A stretch of DNA of 64,000 nucleotides, taken from Takakia lepidozioides. Taxonomy: Eukaryota > Plantae > Bryophyta. The DNA lies in NCBI GenBank assembly GCA_030704615.1, contig CM060731.1, positions 58,218,001 through 58,282,000 of the forward strand, in the 5' to 3' direction. The translations under genes and the position numbers were made by a program. This document shows, one piece after another, positions 4,111 through 57,666 of the stretch (the stretch's first letter is position 1; the number at the start of each line of letters is the position of its first letter). The notes beneath the pieces are model-generated. The model searched no databases. It saw only the letters and a program-made list of their open reading frames with translations, and was not told the origin of the DNA.

Positions 4111-5436
4111 TTGTAGTCCCACCATCAGCTGCATAGAACTTGGAAGTCTAATATGGGGACAAAAAGTCCATTATGATGGACTGTGCACTCTACACATAAT
4201 TATTGTAGTCCAACTGTTGGGACTTCGGCCAATGGTAAGGACTACAATGACTTGTCTGGACTCAAATTACAGTTAATGTTGTATTGGTAGACACTAGGCA
4301 CCAAGTGATAATTCAGCCTTCTCAAACCAGTTGTAATGGTGTACGTGTGATAGCAGATGATGGCTTCATTGATGCCAACAAATGAAGATCAGGACCTCCA
4401 TCTCAGGCCACCACCAACTATAGCGCATTCACCACCAACTACAGTGGAGGCCAAAGTGGACATGGTGGTAGTGCTGTGAACCAAAACTTCCCTCGAACTC
4501 CAAGCTCATCAACTCTTCAAATGTCACCTTTGGGGCTGTTGCGACCGGGGATCGTTGCACCAATTGTTGGTGATCCGTTGAACCCTGAGGTTGATGTCAC
4601 ACCTGATACCATCATGCAAGAGGTTTCAGCTTCAGGAAAGGGTTATGTCAAGAAGTTCCTCATTCCTGGTTCTCCACCAAAGAAGATTCCTGGATCTCCA
4701 CTGCAGGCTGCATTTGTTCCAGAGATTGTCACGACACATACGCTACAAAGTACACATGAAGATGTTGTGGACTTGACAATCCCATCCACTATTGTTCCTC
4801 CTTATGTGGATGTGAAGGTTGAAAGAGATGGTGCCCAAAATACTGGACATGTGGCAACCCTCTCATCAGACTCAGAATTGGGGTCACAGGGATTTGAAAC
4901 TGATGCTGGGGCTGACTCCCAATCTGATTCTGATACAGTTGTGTTGCACAGTACCATAGGTGGAGGCCCCTCACAAGTTTCAGATCCTATATTTCATGTC
5001 ACTCCACCAGTTGCTACCTCCCTTGTTGCTCTGCCAATATCCATTCCCGCAGTTCCAGCTCAATTTGATGGTGGTTCTCCATTACCTATGGTAGTATATG
5101 TACCTCATGCCTTAGCGACAACCCCTCCTATTCTTGGACCAGTGTTGAACCCCCCAGCTGCAGCCCTTGTCAGTCCACATGTTCAGGCAACAGGGAAGCG
5201 TAAACAAGAACGAAAGAGATCTCGCAAGGCATTGAGTGCAGAGTATGCAAAGAAGCCCACCACTAGGGCGGATTCTAAGGTATCAATTGACAAGGATATG
5301 GAGTAGTGCCCAGGTGAAAGTACCCCCTCATCAAAGAGATTTGTCGTGCACAAGCCCTTGGATACGAATGAAGACAACGATCTGAGCCACCATGATAAGA
5401 GTAATTCAATCCCACGGGACGGTGTTGTGAAGGCCG

Positions 5437-17850: not shown

Positions 17851-18762
17851 CAGTGTTGTGCGGGTCCGGGTTTTGAAGGCGGGTACCCGGCGGGTTAGGA
17901 TCCGGGTTACCCGGACCCGCACCCGGACCCGCACCCGGACCCGTGCTATCACAAAAAACCCCGACCCTAACCTAAAATGATCCCGGAACCGGAACCGGAC
18001 CCGCCTGCTGGGTCCAGAACCCGTTAAACCCGCTACCCGTGGGCCAATATAGGGGGTCAGGGTCGGGGTCTTAAATTTAGATGGGGCATGCGGGGTCCAC
18101 CTTAGATCTGGTAGGTTTTGTCATATGTGTGGAGGGGACGAGCAGCAATAGGCAGCAGCAGCAGCCAACCCCACCACGTTATAGCCCAGTGGTAATGCCC
18201 ACATACCACCTCAAAAGCGGTTGTGGGTTCAATCCCCGGAGTGGTGTCACAAAGTTGTCCCCTCTGGGACCATAATTTACACCTCCCAAAGGAGACGACA
18301 TATATTATTATTATGCCAGATCCCACACATCCATGCTATAGTGATCTACCCTTGAGGCATATTACTATTCTTAACATGTTTAAAGAATTGATATTGAAAA
18401 ATAGAAAATGGAACTCAAACTTAATTTAATTCTTATTCATGGTATATATATTCATATTCATGGTATATTTTGAAAGAATGTCTCTTAAAATAAAATTCAT
18501 TATTAGGATTTAAAGTTTTTTCCAGCCAAAACCTGATTTTCTAATTTATTTAATCAATAAATTAGGACCCGGATCCGAACCCGTGAACCCGCTAATATTT
18601 CCCAACAACTACCCGGGCCCTAACCCGAGTCCGTGTTGACAAACCCGGACCCGGATTTTCCAAATTTCAAAAACCCGGATCCGGACCCGGACTTGGCTCC
18701 GAAAAAAAACCCGCACCCGGACCCCGCGGGTTCCTTAAAAAGGCAGAACCCGCACAACACTG
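17851..18762. mobile_element. Non-autonomous hAT-like DNA transposon (MITE)
   Basis: Perfect 15-bp TIR CAGTGTTGTGCGGGT / ACCCGCACAACACTG; dense subterminal ACCCG/CCGGAC repeats at both ends; AT-rich core; no clear TSD. Confidence 0.75.
18172..18300 (+). mobile_element. tRNA-derived SINE head (Pol III A/B boxes) inside the MITE
   Basis: A box TAGCCCAGTGG at 18182-18192 and B box GGTTCAATCCC at 18226-18236; no intact cloverleaf. Confidence 0.5.
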
Positions 18763-19682: not shown

Positions 19683-22600
19683 TCATTGACCCCGAAGGCG
19701 ACACATGGAGCAGCCAAGGCAGTACTCCTGTCCATTTGGCAAGTGGGCAACCCGCAGCGGGCAGAAGTCCGGACCTCTGCACTTAGGGATGACATAGCTA
19801 CGCTGCATGTCAGGGCGGGTAGAGTGACAGTTATCACAAAAGTGGGTCTGCCCAAAGCAAAAATAGGTGGCAGGTGAGCAGCAGTAGCGACACTTGAACT
19901 CCACATACTCCTTTCCATGCCCTTTTTGGCACAGGCCCTGGCCAGCTGCTGCGCTGCAGCCTCCGCAGACCAGATCCATGGGGTTGTGCCTGGCATTGTT
20001 CCCCTCCATCTGGCCCCTGGTAATACCCAATGATTTCAGGCGATATCATCAATGGAAAATATAAAATGTTTAATTAAGTTCCATGACTGCCAAACTAACA
20101 CACAACACAATGTTCTGACACCGAGGAGAGAGGTATTCATTTACCATTCCATCGAGACATTAGCTATTGACATACCCTGAGCAACAGAGTGCCCATCGGG
20201 TATAAGGGGTATGTAAGACGGAGATGGAGTGTTTGCAGTAAGAGCTGGTAGACATCATTCGCGAAAACAGATTTGATACCAAGCAGTTTTAATCACAGGT
20301 CTTTGAATATTGATGCAGATGTCTTCTACAGCATCGTGAATTTAATTCTGCTCAGTGAGGGGGACATAACAGACAATAGATCAGGCATGAGCAGACAATG
20401 ATTACACACCTGGCATTGGCATTACAGTTGCGTTTCCCACCAAAGTAAGGAGTTTGGCATTTGCAGCACATATAGTACTGGTACAGCTGTAGAGCAAAGG
20501 CTGCTGGCCTTCCATCAAAACTGCCACCTGGTTTTAGCTCAGTGACCGATTTTAGCAACCCTTCCATCTTCAGGCGTTTCATAGCCTTATCCTTCACCTG
20601 ACAAGGTCAAAGGTTTTAACAGACGACTAGTTAGAAGCATTATCAAATATAGTTGGTATTTCAGTTCACTAGGCAGGATCATGACTTGTTGCCTATATTT
20701 GGGCTCCACTATGTTCTTCACTCTAGGCTCTGAATGGGGCAGGGGGAGAACCCAGTGAGTGAAGCAGACAGATAGACAACCACCTCTAGCAAAGACAAAG
20801 ACACAATCAAAACAGGAAGATTACACAACTACAAGAGAGTAGGATGACTTACCAGGGCCATCAATACCAAAGGCTTGTGCATGAGAAACTCAAGGGTGGA
20901 GTGTTGCATGAGCTCTGAACACTGTGGGCAGTTCAGATATCCAAAGCTAATCTCAGGGCCGGGAAAACCCTGTGCAAGTTTCTGCTTGGCACAGTGTAAA
21001 TGGATGACATGGCCACAGTGCAGCTGGACAGAAGGTGCACACCGCAAAGGCTCCACTAAACATATGCTACAGAAGTCTTTGGCAGACGGCAGAAACCGGC
21101 CCCCCAGACGCAATGCAGAATTGTGCCGGCAATCATCCTGGATACAGGGCATAGAGAAATGCATAGAGAGTTAGGACATTAATTGATTGATACAAATTCA
21201 AAGTCTGTTACCACCCATACCAAGTCCAACGACAGGCCTGACCTTCAACTGACAGCAACATCATCTGGCACCACTGTCATAACATGCAAGAACCAGAACT
21301 CTGAAATGTTCTAGCTCATTTCATTGGTCTACGGCAACTCCAGTCCAACCTCTCTCTCTCTCCACTGCAGTGCCAAAACAGCCACATCACATCTACTATG
21401 TAGTCAATGCCAGCTCATCAATCACCACTCTCTTCCCTGATGCAGTAAGCCAACTTCCACCAGAAATAGTCAACGATCCATATCTTCCTCACTTCCATCC
21501 ACTCTCCCTTTCTACAAGGAGTAGAAACCTGTGGCAGGGTACCTCTAAGCAAGGTAAGCAAAGTCGTTCACCTCGCACACCACCACAGTGATGCCCACAT
21601 TCCAGGCTCCGTGTACAGGCTGTCTGTGCACGCTTGCGACATTCTTTGGAATTACAGATATCAGCTATGAAACGTTGAACTGCAACTAGCTCCCTCTTCT
21701 CCACACACCAGAGCGTGTCTACCCCCTCTCTCTCCAGCTCATTCTGCAACTCCTTCACAGACCTGAATCAACCATCAAGTTATGAATAATCCACATGTTA
21801 AGTCTGGAGTGACACTACTGCCTGTTCAATCATTTGCATTCTGTTGTAAGGAATGTTCAATGGCCACAGGGCTACGGCAAACAACGTCTTATGAGTACAA
21901 TCTGTTGTAAGGAAACAACAGAAGAAATAATGTATGTGCACCTGGGGCTCAGCTCCTTCTCCTCCTGTCTCTGGAAGCTGCGCACGGGAGTCTCGCAGTA
22001 AAGACATCTGATGGCATTCTTCTCCTCTTCCACCTCCTCACAAGTTCTTCCCAAATGGTAGGGGAAGGCCATGCAGAGCCCACAGAAATCAACCGAGCAA
22101 ACTGTGCACCTGAACCGGTTGGCTGCCTTGTGACACATAGCGGATCGGGATAGCCGTCGCCCTTCATTGTCGAGTTCGATGAAGGGAGCTGTCCTATCAA
22201 ATTCAGGCACCCCTGATAGAGCCACTTCGGGAGGGAGCTTGCTAGCAACCTTCTCAAACACCACCTGGCACCCAGGGCATTTGACAAATGCCGCATTCTT
22301 CTCAAAAAGGGCCTCATTGGCAGCCTCCTCCCACTTCCTGACCAAAAGAAAATCTTGTCTAAGAGTAGTTATAAGCATATCTCTTGAGCTGTTACAGGTT
22401 GCTGTGAGTTGTTACAATTGTTGTACAGCAAGATTTCAACATTGATCCATGGATCTACCCAGGTACAACTCACAGATACTGGAGGATGACTGCATGGTTT
22501 ACATGAGGAAATACAGTCACATCACTAACTGGCAAGAACCTTCAAGCCAAAAAACCTAATGATGAAATTTGATCATACCCAAATTTAAACTGAGAAAAGC

Positions 22601-23678
22601 AGCATGTCTCTTCATTCTACGGTTGGAGATTAAACTTCTGGGATGAACTGACATCATGTGTTCTAGTACCATTCCAGGAGTAACAAAGCTCATATCGCCC
22701 TAATCAACAAGGGTTACATTTCGACTCATGTTTGACATGCTGTGGGCAATAGATACCTGAAACCCTCAGGTGCAAGAACCTGGGAGACCGAAAGGGGGAA
22801 ACTTCCGCTACATGAAGGTGCTGGGCACGCTATCGACTCCAGAGATTGAGTTGTGTCCATGCCCGGCATGCTTTGCTTGCCATTCAAAACTTCAGGCACT
22901 CCCAATCCTTCTCCTTTCTGTCCCAAATCTCTTTCTTGGGAATTTTCAAAATCCAGCTTGTTAGGGTTTTCTGCCCGATGGATCGCAGTGGCAAGAAATG
23001 TTTCAACATGTCTCTGCAAGCATGGTGTGCAAAAGAGACACGCACAGGTAAGCATTGGGAAAACCGAGTGCAATGCCACACTTTCCTGACAAAGCTCGCA
23101 GAAAAACAGGGCGTCCTCCATGTCATCATCAGAAAGAATCAAGAACTCTTCTCTTTCCCACTGCCGCTTTCTAGTACACAATTCTGGTTCTGCCTTCCTT
23201 CCTTTTCTCTCAATGAAGACATTTCTGGATGGGCCGGACGTATGAACTTTTGAAGTCTTCACAGAGCCACAATCCATGTCACAAGAACTGCCTCTCTGCT
23301 GATTGGCTGGACTACTGGATGATGTGGCCCATAACTTCCCTCGATGACAGTTTCCATTACCCATTTCCTTCTCTGAAAAGTTTGAGTTGCACTTTTCTGT
23401 CGACAACTTCTCCCCCTGTCTGTGTCTCTGGTTATGAGGCTCCTGCTGAGGCTTCACCGACAACTTGAATGGGCATGTAATCTCATAACAAGGTTCAGGG
23501 GAAGGCGGAGGGTCTGCAAGAATAAAAGCTGTTGCCCAGTCTCCATCTTCATCCTCATACTCACCCTTTACATATGATAGCAAACTCGATGCCCAATGTC
23601 CAAGATCCTCCCTTGACTGCGTAATTTGTTCAATCACTGGAGCCCCTTCGAGCAGCTGCTCCATTCGTTTGTACACAC
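19683..23678 (-). CDS. E3 ubiquitin ligase: RING1-IBR, SAP-like insert, then a MYCBP2/PHR-type RING-Cys-Relay (RCR) module; 5' exons unresolved (candidate exon 24582-24547)
   Basis: Phase-consistent GT-AG exons 23678-22757, 22337-21942, 21762-21543, 21137-20853, 20597-20410, 20016-19683. They encode [114 protein letters not shown] and CPLRVAHLPNGQEYCLGCSMCR, colinear with the MYCBP2 C-terminus. Confidence 0.9.
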
Positions 23679-25885
23679 CTGCATTTCATTGATGAATTAC
23701 AAGAGCTTAAGCAAAAGGCCAATATTTACAACACCACTGCCAATTGAGTTTCGTTGTCGGTAAATCCAAATGCCCTCATGCATTTGATGGACTTTGGATA
23801 GATGCGAGGAACAAGAATTTGTGATCAATATTCACAGGCAAAAAGCTTCCAAGACACCACCACCCTTTACCAGGTGCAATCCATCACATGAAAACTACAG
23901 CACCTTGCTAGAGAATACTTCTGGGACACCACTGCCCATGACTAGCAATCTATGAGTTCTATGCAGTAGCCCAGCCAGAGTTCTAAGCCAGAGTTCTATG
24001 AGTTCTGAGCTATTCCTGCTAATTTTCCTTATTCAACTTCCTTGTGACTACTGAGCTGCAAGCTCCCAAAATATCTCTCCCTCCTTGAGAACCAGTGGCC
24101 CACATGCTTATGCCCTAGGTGTTGTCAGGTCTTCATTACTCTAGGTACCTTCTTTTACTTATTCCATCTAGACTATTTATAGGAATTGAAAGCTTGGCAA
24201 GCAACAATTTGGTTTCTCTAGACAATGGCTTCAAACTGGAGCTACAGACCGTAAATAGTCCACCCACCAGCACTGTCTATGCCAAAACCGGACATATACA
24301 GAACAGCATATTCCTTAAACCCCAAGGAATCGACCAAGGACTACAGTCCAGTGGTCTAGGGGTTCATGGTAGAAACTTGAAAAACACATAGATAGGTAGT
24401 TTAGATAGTGCAAGTCATTCGATAGTGATAACTTATCCAGCCAAGTTCACTTCCAATTGTTCCGGATGCAAGCTGACCAACTGGACAACTAATTGAATCA
24501 TTGAGACTGAAATTCGGTGTAATCCTGAGCTTGCAAGGCATATTACCTCCTCAAGTATCCGAATGCTTATATCCGGTCGAATCTGAAAAACAGAACTAAT
24601 GTCCACAACCCCACGTCGAAATTATATCGATGAATAGAGATGGTTTCACACCACTTCCACACAACTTTCGTGGTAAATACTGGCAAACTACGACCGAATT
24701 CCAGTGCCGCTTGCATCAACCTGGAAATACTTCTGGACTCTTTGGACGATCTGCTAATTACAACATTAGCTGATTGCATCAACCAAACCGCGATTCTTGA
24801 CTCCATGGACAATCTGCCAGCATTATAGCATCATTCGATTTCAAAGACCATCACATGCTGCTTCTTCCAGTGCTGTCCTTTCCGACGCATCCTCTATCCT
24901 GCTTCCCAACACTCGTGGCGCCAGCTTCAACAATAAAACTGAGCCAAGATAAGGACTGTCAAACAAATTACACTAAAATTTCAGGTCACAAAGCATGCTT
25001 CTCGAAGGCAGCAATGGGCCTACAGACAGACCGTAAATCGTATCAGTCAGGCTTTCAAAAAGAGTGCATCACGGCCAGAAAGGTTCCTCGCAAACAGGCC
25101 CGGAAACGAGATTAGCATTACACAAATTCTAACTCCCCGGACTCCAGCCTGCAGCTGAGCATCACTCAAAGTAAACAGGGTTTGCGGAATGCCATGACCT
25201 AATTGAGCGCCCGCAGGAGCCCTAAACCAGCGAGATCGTTGAGGAGAACACCTCGCCCCGTCCCGCGTTCTCACTGGTCCAAATATTCTTGATTATCTGT
25301 TTTTATCTTATTGCCAGAATTTTTTTCTTTTTGTTTTCTTTATAAGGGAAAGCTAGACTCGAGTCGCCAACTTACTAGTTGTCAATTAAGTTTTTTTTAT
25401 TTTTTTTTATTTTTTAACAGAACAGGGGATTGTAGCCCGAATAAATTTTATTAATAATTATTTGGGGGGAAAATATAGATATATTTAAATGAACGACGAT
25501 CATTTACATTTTGTTTTTTTCTTTCTTTTCTTTTGGTTGGCCCTGCCCAGGCAGCCTAGGTCCACTCAAAGTTTGACAGACATTATGGATTAACGGATAA
25601 TCAATAGATGAATGGTTGGCCAGGTCCAAAGGTAAAGCCGATCTACGAACATTGAGCTATTGGATGAACTTCTTTCTTTCTGAGTTTTCAGTTTTCATCC
25701 ACATGAGAATATAATTCTTGCCAGATATATTAGAGGACAGATTGGCATACAATATCAGTTCTACAAGGCCTCTCAAACTCAAACTACTGTCAAGTCTAAC
25801 TTACATTACATTTCTATCAAGACTGTTAAGTCAAGTCACCCACTTTAGGTTATCTGTTGATAAGAAAATGAATAGGCATATATTC

Positions 25886-52869: not shown

Positions 52870-55800
52870 TGTTGGAAGTAATTAAACATATCTACAACCA
52901 GACATACTGACAAGTCACAGTTAACAATAGAGATAAGCCTCGGTTAGCTAAAAGATAGCTAAAGTTAGCTTTAGTTATTAGTGACTCAAGTCATTGTACC
53001 AGAATAGCAAGTGGAGATAACTTAAGTAAAAGCATGGAGTTATGCTATAGTTATCTCAGCTATTCTAGATTAGACTTTGAGTATAAATACTTTGGGTGGA
53101 GAGTTCTCAGTAATCAGTTTAAGCTTTAGTCTAAGACTTTAGTTCTTGCTCAATTCTAACATGGTATCAGAGCCATTCTTCTCTAGGTAAGAGTTGGTAG
53201 TTGAGATTGAGAGAACTTGATTATGGCTGGAGCGTCATCTTCTAGCAATCCTCCTTCTATGTCTATGACGAGTGCGTTAGATGTGAGAGTGGAAGATCGA
53301 TTCAATGGAGCTAACTATCAAACCTGGAAGTTTAGGATGGAGATGGTTCTTCTAGACAAAGATCTATGGGGAGTGGTTGATGGATCAGTCCCAAGACTTG
53401 ACACTATTGTTAGCCAAGGCATATGGGATAGGAAAGATCAGAAAGCAAGAGCTAGCATCATCACAAGCTTGAGAGACAATCAGTTGCATCTCATTATAAG
53501 CGCTAAGAATGCTAAGGATGTTTGGGATAAGCTAGCAAGCATATATGAGACGAAGGATGTCACATCGCAAGTGTATGCGACGCAGAAGTTCTATGGTCTG
53601 AAGATGACCGAGTCAGACTCAGTTGAACAACACTTGAATTTGTTTTGTGTGTTGCGAGATCAACTAGTTTCTGTGGGAACTAATGTGACTGATGAACACG
53701 CCGCAGTGGTGTTATTGGCAACCTTACCTGAATCCTATGATGGTTTTGTGGTGTCCCTAGCAGGACAAACCAACTTAACTATTGATGTTGTCATAGGACT
53801 TCTCCTCAAGGAGGAAACAAGAAGAAAAGGTCAAGGTACGTCTACAGAGGTAGACAGAGCTTTGTTCACAGGCAAGACTGGAGTAGTCTTGAATAGAAGA
53901 CTCCCTTCACATATGTCTCAGAAGTCCCAGAGGTTTCAGAAACCTCAATCTAGCTCAAAGATCAAAAAGCCCAAAGTAAGATGCTTTTATTGCAAGAAAC
54001 TTGGTCACATGATCAAGGATTGTAGAAAGCGCATTGCAGATGAGCGCAGCAGAGAGAGTCAAGGAAACATAGCTATTCATCAGAGGAATGCTATTTTATT
54101 TGTTGTGTCTCTCTCAGCCACTACTAGACAGAAACATGTGTGGTATGTTGATTCAGGAGCATCTCAACATATGAGTTCAGAGAAAGAGCATTTCTTATCC
54201 TATAGATCTCTTTCACCTACACAATATGTTCTTTTGGGAGATGATAGCAAACATGCCATTAGTGGGGAAGGCTCAGTCTCTCTTATGCTCAATGAAGGGG
54301 AAACCATAGAGGTGGAAAATGTCCTACATGTCCCTACTTTAACAAAGAACCTGTTGTTTGTAAGGCAAATTGTTGCAAAGGGATACAGAGTGGTATTCCA
54401 AGATGAGAGTTGTACTATCACAGATAGCTCAGGAGCTGTGGTAGCAAGAGCTATTCTTGATAATTGCTTGTATAGATTACAACATCATGTCTCTAGTGCT
54501 CTTACCACATTTTCACCACAGTTGGGATCTACACCTGTCATGTCAGAAACAGAGTTGTGGCATAGAAGGTTAGGTCATGTGAGCATTAAGAAGTTGAGAC
54601 AGATGCAACTCTCAAGCCATCTTGTGGAAGGACTACCATTGAAGGAGATGAGCGATATGCGTCTATGCAAAGGTTGCTTGGAAGGGAAGCAACATCGAGG
54701 TCAATTTCCTAAGGATGGTGGACGAAGAGCCACAAGTATATTGGAGATTGTACATTCTGATGTGTGTGGGCCAATGCAAACCACATCACTTGGAGGAGCA
54801 AGGTACTTTGTGACATTCATTGATGATTTGTCAAGGAGGGTTGTGGTGAATTTCTTAAGACAGAAAATCAAGTGCTAGAGAAATTCAAGGAGTTCAAAGT
54901 ACTTACAGAAAAACAAACTGGAAAGCCTCTTAAGATTTTGAGATCTGACAATGGTGGTGAGTACATCTCAAAGGCTTTCAATCAGTTTTGTCAAGAGAAT
55001 GGAATAGCTCGACAGTTTACTGTTCCATATACACCTGAGCAGAATGGTGTAGCTGAGCGGATGAATAGATCACTACAAGAATCTGCAAGGAGTATGTTGA
55101 AAGAAGTGAATCTTTCAAATCATTTTTGGGCAGAAGCTGTTGGCACTGCAACCTATCTTCACAACAGAATACCTACCAAATCAGTGTTGGGAAAAACACC
55201 AGAAGAGGTATGGAGTGGTCAGAAGCCTAGTGTGGCTCATTGTAGGATTTTTGGATGCCGTGTATATGTCCATATCCCTACTCAGAAGCGAAAGAAACTT
55301 GACTCCAAATCAGAAGAATGCATCTTCATTGGCTACACAGAAGGTGTAAAGGGATATAAGTTGTTCAATAAGACAACTAAGGCTGTCAAACACAGTAGGG
55401 ACGTAGTGTTTGATGAAAGCTTCATACCCTCTTTGGTAGTGGGAGAAGATGACATGGGAATGAGCTTAGAGCCATTACACCATTTTCAAAATGAGTCTTA
55501 TGAGGAGCCAATACAAGAGATGGCTGAAGCAAATGATGGAGGTGTTCAACTTGATGGAGTTGATCAAGGAGTCGAAGTTGGTGAACCACTTGTTGATATG
55601 GACTCTAGAGATGAAATTGAAGATGTGCCAATTCTAAGAAGATCTCAGCGGGAAAGAAAAACTCCTAGTAGGCTGATTATATCTATGAGTGCCATTGAAG
55701 CTATGGAAGAAGCATCACAAGTGGTTGAGCCTGCTACTTATGAGGAAGCGATGCGCTCTCCAGACAACCTACAATGGGAAGAAGCAATAAACTCAGAGTT

Positions 55801-57666
55801 GGATTCATTGATGCAAAACAAAGCATGGACACTCACTAGGTTGCCTACAGGACGAAGAGCCATTGGTTGCAAATGGATCTTCAAGTTGAAGTACAAAGCT
55901 GATGGATCTATTTACCGGTACAAAGCTCGTCTTGTAGCTAAGGGCTATACACAAATTCAAGGAGTGGATTACAATGAAACATTTTCACCAGTGGTGAAGA
56001 TTTCTTCTATCAGAATGTTGCTAGCTCTTGCAGCTCAATATGATCACGAAGTTCATCAAATGGATGTTAAGACCGCATTTCTGAATGGAGAACTACAAGA
56101 AGAGATCTACATGAGACAACCTGAAGGGTTTGTACAGGGAGGAAGTGATATTGTGTGTAAGCTGCAAAAGAGTTTGTATGGACTCAAACAAAGTCCTCGA
56201 GCTTGGTATGCTAGGATCGATGCTTACCTCTTAAAAGCAAGATTTGAGCGAAGCATTGCTGACACAAACATCTATGTGAAAAAAAAATGGGAAAGCAATT
56301 TGTGGTCATAGCTCTATATGTGGATGACACAATCATTGTCACCAACGATCATCAAAGGTTGTTGCCAGAAACCAAAGCACTGTTAAGTGCTGAGTTTGCC
56401 ATGACTGACATGGGTGAGATTCGGTTCTGTCTTGGTATTCAAATCAGCAGAGATCGATTGAACCATACAATATTCATGCATCAACGACAATACATTGAGA
56501 CAATTCTACAAAGGTTTAAGTTGGAGATGAGTAAGCCAACATCAACTCCTCTCGAAGTTGGTTTGAAACTTACGAAGGATATGGCACCTAAGACTCAAGA
56601 AGAGCAAGAAGATATGAGGAAAACTCCTTATCAAAGCGCAGTCGGCAGTTTGATGTATTGCATGGTTTGTACTAGGCCAGACATTGCACATTCAGTGGGA
56701 GTGGTCTCACAATTTCTTTCAAATCCCGGACAAACCCATTGGAAAGCAGTGAAGAAGATATTTCGATATCTAAGAGGAACATCAACCTCTGGTCTACTCT
56801 ATAAGAGAGTGGAAGATCCAAGTTTGTTGGGGTTTGCTGATGCTGACTGGGCAGGAGACATTGATAGTAGAAAATCAACTTCAGGCCATTGTTTCCTCCT
56901 AGCAGGTGGAGCTGTATCTTGGTCTAGCAAACGACAAGTTGCAACAGCGTTGTCATCAACAGAAGCTGAGTACATGTCCATTACACAAGCAACAAATGAG
57001 GCTATTTGGTTACGGAAGTTGCTTGGAGATTTGGATTATCTCCAATCACTACCTACGACTCTCTATTGTGACAATCAAAGTGCGATTGCACTGAGTCAGA
57101 ATCCGAAATATCATTCAAGGACGAAGCACATTGAAGTGCAACATCACTACATACGAGAAGTTGTATGCAAGGGAGAGATCAAGATGATCTATTGTGCTAC
57201 AGGAGATATGGTTGCGGATATTTTGACGAAGAGTCTACCACAAACAAAACACATAAAGTGTTCAACCTTACTTGGTGTCTCTTCTCCAAAGACAAACGAA
57301 GTAGCTCAATGATATGGTTTAATTGAGTGGGAGTGTTGGAAGTAATTAAACATATCTACAACCAGACATACTGACAAGTCACAGTTAACAATAGAGATAA
57401 GCCTCGGTTAGCTAAAAGATAGCTAAAGTTAGCTTTAGTTATTAGTGACTCAAGTCATTGTACCAGAATAGCAAGTGGAGATAACTTAAGTAAAAGCATG
57501 GAGTTATGCTATAGTTATCTCAGCTATTCTGGATTAGACTTTGAGTATAAATAGGGAGAGCTCGGAGGGTGGACACAGCTTGTTGTGGTCCCATGGTTGG
57601 GTGGAGAGTTCTCAGTAATCAGTTTAAGCTTTAGTCTAAGACTTTAGTTCTTGCTCAATTCTAACA
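52870..57666 (+). mobile_element. Full-length young Ty1/copia LTR retrotransposon
   Basis: LTRs 52870-53161 and 57334-57666 (TG..CA); TSD TACAT; PBS TGGTATCAGAGCC 53162-53174 (tRNA-iMet); PPT ~57325-57333. Confidence 0.97.
53223..57312 (+). pseudogene. Copia gag-pol polyprotein with two frameshifts
   Basis: Gag, zinc knuckle CFYCKKLGHMIKDC, protease VDSGAS, integrase (HSDVCGP, RSDNGGEY, NGVAER), RT (QMDVKTAFLNG, YVDD), RNase H (ADADWAG). Frame breaks at ~54865 and ~56285, both in A-runs. Confidence 0.92.

What the first reader, a model, noticed from the sequence alone, without database searches (positions are those of the whole stretch)
19683..21762. A land-plant RING-Cys-Relay (MYCBP2/PHR-type) E3 ligase with both relay cysteines
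Seen: four spliced 3' exons encode a module colinear with the MYCBP2/Highwire/RPM-1 C-terminus, including the pre-RING Cys/His cluster, RING, helical linker and tandem-cysteine domain. The upstream relay Cys (FGGKRNC, equivalent to human FGGEARC, C4520) and the downstream Cys (YFCFGQTHFC, equivalent to FFCFGTTHFC, C4572) are both present, as is the following His. Established: RCR is an unusual E3 class, characterised in animal MYCBP2, that relays ubiquitin between two cysteines and esterifies Thr/Ser. Inference: this plant may have a non-lysine (ester-linked) ubiquitination system that, to my knowledge, has not been characterised in plants. Canonical introns and plant neighbours (CBF5, APG3, PPR) argue against contamination.
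Basis: partly seen in the sequence, partly recalled or inferred. Interest (0 to 1): 0.92.

Follow-up and report, generated by a model that had tools for sequence, protein, structure and literature searches.

The report
Moss two-cysteine relay ubiquitin ligase
This is a real, spliced gene of a moss-like plant encoding a ubiquitin-tagging enzyme with the two-cysteine relay chemistry so far studied only in the animal nerve protein MYCBP2, but joined to the front half of a different ligase class, a combination that turns out to be widespread in spore plants, green algae and protists and appears untested.

Summary
Observation confirmed and extended. The gene has six coding exons (23664-19683, minus strand, 776 aa); spliced contigs from two studies support its introns. 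The last three exons match MYCBP2's RING-Cys-Relay (RCR) structures (E 1e-11 to 1e-22). Both relay cysteines (C661, C719), the histidine, two pocket phenylalanines and the zinc ligands are kept; the triad Glu is Asp and F4586 is Arg. It is not a PHR/MYCBP2 orthologue by architecture: no B-box or giant N-terminus. Instead an RBR-type RING1-IBR, lacking Rcat, precedes the RCR. The same hybrid occurs in mosses, lycophytes, ferns, green algae and many protists; no seed-plant hit was found. Green-plant copies form a clade apart from B-box PHR proteins, so this is old vertical inheritance, not contamination. Databases already auto-label some non-animal relatives 'RCR-type' or 'MYCBP2', but I found no paper on them. 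Relay and ester chemistry are inferred, not shown. The scan noted the hybrid only on this same window.

The parts
24547..25078 (-). 5' UTR exon (5' end approximate; 12 upstream ATGs, in-frame stop just before the splice donor)
   Evidence: contig pieces and joint 23676|24545 in both runs
22757..23678 (-). Coding exon 1: ATG at 23664; land-plant N-terminal motif, low-complexity linker and RING1
   Evidence: orthologues start at the same Met
23509..23565 (-). Acidic N-terminal motif (aa 34-52) conserved in moss, lycophytes and ferns; function unknown
22810..23100 (-). RBR-type RING1 (aa 189-285; C8 variant with a long insert and C-P-x3-C loop 2)
   Evidence: family profile A3 hits HOIP, ARIH2, HOIL-1, RNF144A; model of orthologue matches RBR RING1-IBR
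21942..22337 (-). Coding exon 2: RING1-IBR helix, IBR domain (aa 323-402) and the CxxC (aa 414-417) that starts the MYCBP2-like pre-RING unit
   Evidence: PF01485 E 4.5e-5; 44 of 54 family members hit IBR; splice joints
21543..21762 (-). Coding exon 3: SAP-like two-helix insert (aa 436-461, weak support) and pre-RING Cys/His cluster (aa 471-506)
   Evidence: weak hits to RFFL/MANF SAP-like domains
20853..21137 (-). Coding exon 4: RING-H2 of the RCR module (aa 531-581)
   Evidence: 5O6C E 1.9e-16
20410..20597 (-). Coding exon 5: helical linker, first tandem-cysteine zinc pair and mediator-loop start
   Evidence: 6T7F E 8.1e-12
20424..20426 (-). Upstream relay cysteine C661 (= MYCBP2 C4520)
   Evidence: Cys in 137 of 138 homologues
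19683..20016 (-). Coding exon 6: tandem-cysteine domain to the stop codon
   Evidence: 6T7F E 2e-22
19974..19976 (-). D680, at the position of the triad acid (MYCBP2 E4534)
19857..19859 (-). Downstream catalytic cysteine C719 (= C4572), followed by F720 (= F4573); F725 = F4578
19824..19826 (-). H730 (= H4583); R733 three residues on replaces F4586

Best explanation
A single-chain, catalytically active RING-Cys-Relay ubiquitin ligase. The RING-H2 (aa 531-581) binds E2~ubiquitin, the mediator-loop C661 takes ubiquitin as a thioester, passes it to C719, and the C719-H730-D680 site transfers it to a hydroxyl acceptor (Thr/Ser), as in MYCBP2. The RING1-IBR in front has no catalytic cysteine of its own and acts as a regulatory or recruiting unit (ubiquitin, partner or substrate binding), standing in for MYCBP2's giant N-terminus and Fbxo45 receptor. 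Shown: gene, splicing, purifying selection, residues, fold of an orthologue, family range. Inferred by homology: E2 binding, relay. Inferred more weakly: ester linkage and the role of RING1-IBR.
For: Exon-wise hits to the RCR structures. AlphaFold model of the Ceratodon orthologue (mean pLDDT 88.8) matches 5O6C first: Foldseek E 7.5e-19, Z 16.2 over 236 residues, rmsd 5.4. Both relay Cys and the His each kept in 137 of 138 homologues; acid (E/D) in 124 of 138; the upstream Cys was not in the query that collected them. Synonymous sites saturated (pS 0.77-0.84) while pN is 0.16-0.19 against two relatives. Triad and hydrophobic Thr pocket described in PMC9527308; relay in PMC9120709. No Rcat motif or Cys in the Rcat active-site register in 54 family members or the window. 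The RING1 hydrophobic E2-contact position (CxΦC) is L/V/I in only 27 of 54, which favours the RING-H2 as the working E2 site.
Against: No biochemistry for any non-animal member. F4586 is Arg here (an H-x-x-R-P-D motif in most green-plant members), most protist members have Trp at F4573, and the acid is Asp, so acceptor choice may differ. The Diphasiastrum orthologue has a degenerate downstream motif. Residue roles for C4572, H4583, E4534 and the Phe cluster are recalled from Pao et al. 2018, which was not held.
Confidence: 0.52

Rival explanations
1. The two-cysteine relay works, but the final acceptor is not Thr/Ser: lysine, or a non-protein hydroxyl such as a sugar or metabolite bound with the help of the Arg that replaces F4586.
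For: F4586 is absent from the IBR-type members and is Phe in only 6 of 13 giant proteins; green-plant members share R-P-D there; W replaces F4573 in 59 of 82 IBR-type members.
Against: The window keeps F4573, F4578, the His and an acid, i.e. most of the esterification site; variation at F4586 inside the PHR clade itself suggests it is not decisive.
Confidence: 0.2
2. A true RBR/RCR mechanistic hybrid: RING1 is a working E2 dock (possibly for a second E2, holding E2~Ub open as in RBRs) and the tandem-cysteine domain takes the place of Rcat; ubiquitin bound at RING1-IBR may activate it allosterically.
For: RING1 zinc ligands, the RING1-IBR helix and the IBR are kept together across eukaryote supergroups; best relatives are RBR RING1-IBR units; loop 2 has the RBR-like C-P-x3-C spacing in 26 of 54, including the window.
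Against: The RING-H2 is far better conserved than RING1; some members (Capsaspora, Chara P0006, Mesostigma) show no RING1 by pattern; the RING1 E2-contact position is variable.
Confidence: 0.15
3. An ordinary RING-type scaffold ligase, or a one-cysteine ligase; the extra cysteines are structural or only one is used.
For: Two RING folds are present; cysteine-rich domains conserve Cys for zinc binding.
Against: The two Cys sit exactly at the MYCBP2 catalytic positions, on top of a full set of zinc-ligand positions (24 by my recollection of the MYCBP2 sites), and are 99-100% conserved together with the His.
Confidence: 0.11
4. Artefact: contamination, recent horizontal transfer from an animal or protist, or a dead gene.
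For: No seed-plant, Marchantia or Physcomitrium name among the hits; one minor splice form frameshifts.
Against: Spliced in two studies; equivalent exon layout in related loci; purifying selection; tree follows green-plant phylogeny, land plants 99/96; IBR exon groups with mosses 97/95; a relative is one uninterrupted 674-aa ORF on a 2.2-kb contig.
Confidence: 0.02

Closest known systems
MYCBP2/PHR1/Highwire/RPM-1 RING-Cys-Relay ligase (PDB 5O6C, 6T7F)
   Same: Pre-RING Cys/His unit, RING-H2, helical linker, tandem-cysteine domain; both relay Cys, His, F4573, F4578; about 37-39% identity and Z 16 for the orthologue model.
   Different: 776 aa against about 4600; no B-box, and none of the RLD/PHR/FBD1 region; RING1-IBR and a SAP-like insert instead; Asp for E4534, Arg for F4586; mediator loop five residues longer; separate clade in the tree.
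RBR ligases (HOIP, ARIH1/2, HOIL-1, RNF144, RNF216, parkin)
   Same: RING1, connecting helix and IBR in the same order and fold (profile E 5e-10 to 1e-8; Z 7-10).
   Different: No Rcat/RING2 domain and no Cys in its active-site register; the catalytic end is an RCR module with its own E2-binding RING.
Automatically annotated non-animal 'RCR-type E3 ubiquitin transferase' / 'MYCBP2' entries (e.g. Polysphondylium CYY_007838, Paratrimastix, JGI entries; Ceratodon KC19_2G009400, Ceratopteris KP509_12G090100, Selaginella LOC9631788 as hypothetical proteins)
   Same: Same family and mostly the same RING1-IBR-RCR layout; moss orthologues 61-75% identical per exon.
   Different: Database labels only; no experiments or description of the hybrid architecture found.

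Membership tests
RCR E3 ligases | RING-H2 followed by helical linker and tandem-cysteine zinc domain | tested here: met
   orthologue model matches 5O6C/6T7F
RCR E3 ligases | Upstream catalytic Cys in the mediator loop (C4520) | tested here: met
   C661; 137 of 138 homologues
RCR E3 ligases | Downstream catalytic Cys (C4572) with His (H4583) | tested here: met
   C719, H730
RCR E3 ligases | Acid of the Cys-His-Glu triad (E4534) | tested here: met
   conservative Asp (D680); Asp also in 3 of 13 giant proteins
RCR E3 ligases | Hydrophobic threonine pocket (F4573, F4578, F4586) | tested here: inconclusive
   two of three kept; F4586 is Arg; residue roles recalled from Pao et al. 2018, pocket described in PMC9527308
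RCR E3 ligases | Intramolecular ubiquitin relay between the two cysteines | not testable with these tools
   needs activity probes and Cys mutants
RCR E3 ligases | Esterification of Thr/Ser, no lysine activity | not testable with these tools
   needs discharge assays
PHR proteins (MYCBP2 orthologues) | Giant N-terminus (RLD, PHR, FBD1 domains) and B-box before the RCR | tested here: not met
   776 aa with a supported start codon; IBR in place of the B-box; none of 29 B-box proteins matches the IBR exon
PHR proteins (MYCBP2 orthologues) | Groups with PHR proteins in a tree of the RCR module | tested here: not met
   green clade 98/92 and B-box clade 95/95 are separate; root unknown, no AU test run; window placed exon by exon
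RBR E3 ligases | RING1 domain | tested here: met
   C8 variant in green plants
RBR E3 ligases | IBR domain | tested here: met
RBR E3 ligases | Rcat/RING2 domain with its catalytic Cys | tested here: not met
   no Rcat motif in the window exons or 54 relatives; no Cys five residues before the third IBR ligand
RBR E3 ligases | RING1 binds E2~ubiquitin | not testable with these tools
   CxΦC hydrophobic residue present in the window (L) but in only half of the family

The most novel reading that the evidence does not exclude
An ancient, pan-eukaryotic class of RBR/RCR hybrid ligases in which an RBR RING1-IBR feeds or controls a two-cysteine relay, with two E2-docking RINGs in one chain. It would be the older, compact form of RCR chemistry (animal PHR proteins being a derived B-box version), give spore plants, algae and protists a dedicated ester-linked ubiquitination pathway, and have been lost in seed plants.
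Probability: 0.22. Interest if true: 0.85.

Novelty: new variant of a known kind. Interest (0 to 1): 0.66.

Why it matters
Reviews up to 2024 call MYCBP2 the sole RCR member (PMC9120709, PMC11503651), and its chemistry is tied to neurons. A compact 600-800 aa single-chain family with the same catalytic residues across spore plants, green algae, ciliates, diplonemids, amoebozoa and Rhizaria shows that the relay is much older than nervous systems. It gives natural variants of the acceptor pocket (F/W at 4573; F/Q/R at 4586) with which to test what makes the enzyme threonine-selective, and a candidate writer of non-lysine ubiquitin in plants that can be knocked out in Ceratodon or Ceratopteris. 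The RING1-IBR fusion links two transthiolating ligase classes thought to be separate.

Tried and rejected
Searching coding exon 1 alone for homologues gave nothing (length window excludes full-length relatives). Bacterial origin rejected: one hit among 185,579 prokaryote genomes, a 2.5-kb MAG contig that is probably eukaryotic contamination. Reading the IBR as an Rcat domain rejected: its CPxC..EK start looks Rcat-like, but it ends as an IBR and lacks the catalytic Cys register; the Cys in 'AMCHK' is moss-specific. The alternative acceptor at 22264 rejected as the main form: it frameshifts (stop at aa 408). A link to flagella (present in plants with swimming sperm, absent in seed plants) was considered; Closterium and dictyostelids, which lack flagella, have the family, so it is not supported. 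The SAP-like insert has only weak hits (E 0.02-0.6). The depth spike at 21667-22060 comes from unrelated contigs matching a short purine-rich stretch and was ignored. Ten literature searches found no paper on plant or protist RCR proteins; the two primary papers (Pao 2018, Mabbitt 2020) are not held.

Full report
Gene structure. The region reads on the minus strand. Contigs of two public runs from two studies lay only on exons and skip six GT..AG introns: 20017-20409, 20598-20852, 21138-21542, 21763-21941, 22338-22756 and 23679-24546. Four of these joints are seen in both runs; 21138-21542 and 22338-22756 only in run X1, the latter with 30 letters on the short side. The runs are 'RNA?' by the tool's guess, but contigs that lack introns at exact splice sites behave as spliced RNA. 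With these joints the frame is open from ATG 23664 to TGA 19683, 776 aa; an in-frame stop lies just upstream in the first exon, and a minor acceptor at 22264 frameshifts. Orthologues begin at the same Met. Neighbours are plant genes and retroelements: BAHD transferase, HAD-domain protein, CBF5, Ty3, RF-1, copia, PPR.

The RCR module. Searched exon by exon against the PDB, exons 4, 5 and 6 each return MYCBP2 chains 5O6C/6T7F as the only strong hits (E 1.9e-16, 8e-12, 2e-22). Counting along the 5O6C chain (position + 4377) puts C4520 on window C661, E4534 on D680, C4572 on C719, F4573 on F720, F4578 on F725, H4583 on H730 and F4586 on R733. C4520 is named as the catalytic residue in PMC12664034; a Cys-His-Glu triad and a hydrophobic threonine pocket are described in PMC9527308; the relay and mediator loop in PMC9120709. 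The assignment of the other residue numbers to these roles, and of the zinc ligands, is from my memory of Pao et al. 2018, which is not held. All Cys/His positions that I recall as ligands are present in the window.

The family. The last exon matches 973 clusters at 50% identity, 490 at E below 1e-10. Named members: Ceratodon, Pteridium, Adiantum, Ceratopteris, Psilotum, Selaginella, Diphasiastrum, Chara (two), Closterium, Mesostigma, Cymbomonas, Stylonychia, Moneuplotes, Diplonema, Namystynia, Polysphondylium, Clastostelium, Bonamia, Capsaspora, Paratrimastix, plus animal and Cavenderia giants. In 138 homologues the upstream Cys, downstream Cys and His are each present in 137; the acid is E or D in 124; position 4573 is mostly F in giants and W in protist IBR-type members; F4586 is F in only 6 of 13 giants and not among the common residues of the IBR type. 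Against two related loci, synonymous sites are saturated while pN is 0.16-0.19, and exon boundaries correspond. One relative is a single 674-aa ORF on a 2.2-kb contig, so the fusion is not a gene-model artefact.

The N-terminal half. Exon 2 hits Pfam IBR (E 4.5e-5) and exon 1 holds a RING pattern. Of 184 homologues with the full RCR, 90 have an IBR motif in front (54 also a RING1 by pattern) and 29 a B-box; none of the B-box proteins matches the IBR exon. A profile of the 54 RING1-IBR units finds HOIP, ARIH2, HOIL-1 and RNF144 first (E 5e-10 to 5e-7); 44 of 54 hit Pfam IBR. No Rcat motif or Rcat-register Cys exists in them or in the window. Those 54 were picked by the RING1 pattern, so their ligand conservation is partly by construction; the E2-contact hydrophobic position is kept in only half. 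An AlphaFold model of Ceratodon residues 85-680 (pLDDT 88.8) matches 5O6C over its last 250 residues (Foldseek E 7.5e-19; Z 16.2, 236 aligned, rmsd 5.4) and RBR RING1-IBR units over its first 230 (Z 8-10). An Atlas cluster of 621 mostly ciliate proteins matches the whole model, and a diatom cluster fuses the RCR to an FBA domain. Green-plant members have a two-helix insert with weak similarity to RFFL/MANF SAP-like domains.

Evolution. In a tree of the RCR module from 66 database proteins, land plants (99/96) sit inside a green-plant clade (98/92), apart from the B-box/PHR clade (95/95) (same split). The root is unknown, so which architecture is older is not shown; dictyostelids have both types (Cavenderia B-box giant, Polysphondylium IBR type). 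Placed exon by exon, the window is sister to the Ceratodon-like sequences (97/95 for exon 2), consistent with a moss or close bryophyte. No seed-plant name appeared in any search and the Atlas shows no large streptophyte RCR cluster. Loss in seed plants is likely but not proven: the word-based search is lossy (one search missed Ceratodon), 50% clusters can hide members, and Marchantia and Physcomitrium were not seen either.

Mechanism. Most likely (0.52): RING-H2 binds E2~Ub, C661 accepts ubiquitin, relays it to C719, and the C719-H730-D680 site esterifies Thr/Ser, with RING1-IBR as a non-catalytic regulatory or recruiting unit. The relay itself, whatever the acceptor or E2 site, I put at about 0.85. 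Rivals: different acceptor (0.20), RING1 as a working E2 dock in a true hybrid (0.15), ordinary RING or single-Cys ligase (0.11), artefact (0.02). All catalytic steps are inferred from homology.

Novelty. Reviews call MYCBP2 the sole RCR member or the single human one. Ten full-text searches found nothing on plant or protist RCRs or on an IBR-RCR fusion, but most subscription papers are outside the library, and UniRef/JGI already label some non-animal relatives as RCR-type or MYCBP2. Verdict: new variant of a known kind; it meets the sequence and fold criteria of RCR, fails those of PHR orthology and of RBR. Interest 0.66.

Limits and steps left out. It was translated once inside a script only to check the frame. 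Folding and the full-module tree therefore use database orthologues. No contig that I take for human was fetched; human MYCBP2 was seen only as PDB chains, and a vertebrate-type MYCBP2 fragment among the protein hits (P0254) entered only the automatic motif count, not the alignments or trees.

Noticed in passing
window:11069-12673 (-): Intronless 534-aa ORF with an N-terminal HAD hydrolase domain (PF00702, E 1.4e-9) and a C-terminal part with a DDLDTT motif, resembling microbial-type HAD/terpene cyclases; already noted by the scan.
   Followed up: partly
window:23509-23565 (-): Short acidic motif near the N-terminus, conserved in moss, lycophytes and ferns amid otherwise variable sequence; candidate binding motif.
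   Followed up: partly
window:24547-25078 (-): 5' UTR exon with 12 upstream ATGs; possible translational control.
   Followed up: no
window:22264 (-): Alternative 3' splice site 73 nt into coding exon 2, seen in one contig at depth 4.2 against 6.8 for the main form; frameshifts and would remove the whole RCR (possible unproductive splicing).
   Followed up: partly
window:19611-19613: Both runs carry 40 extra letters in the 3' UTR relative to the window: an allelic indel or a deletion in this assembly.
   Followed up: no
Atlas cluster (row 5); P0275, P0279, P0297: The RCR module is also fused to an FBA domain (diatom-dominated cluster of 73), to a Macro domain and to a C2 domain: it behaves as a mobile catalytic cassette.
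   Followed up: no
P0005 (Diphasiastrum complanatum): Downstream site is degenerate (YICYGGVNFC) though both cysteines remain; two near-identical loci in that genome.
   Followed up: no
L006:1260-2408: An intronless RCR-family gene on a 2.5-kb contig of a Flavobacterium MAG; most likely eukaryotic contamination of the bin.
   Followed up: no
window:15841-17640 (-): Intronless CBF5/dyskerin gene, 2 kb downstream of the ligase on the same strand.
   Followed up: partly
window:28692-31499 (+) and 53217-57312 (+): A Ty3 chromovirus-type retroelement with frame breaks, and a copia element in three ORFs.
   Followed up: partly
window:2558-3781 (+): 407-aa ORF with coiled coil and a C-terminal RING-H2-like Cys/His pattern, next to other intronless ORFs; may be part of a hAT-type element carrying a RING gene like those noted elsewhere in this genome.
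   Followed up: no
window:17860-18070 and 18560-18760: Clusters of short ACCCGG/CCGGGT-rich repeats flanking a 500-bp stretch between CBF5 and the ligase; looks like a small non-autonomous transposon.
   Followed up: no
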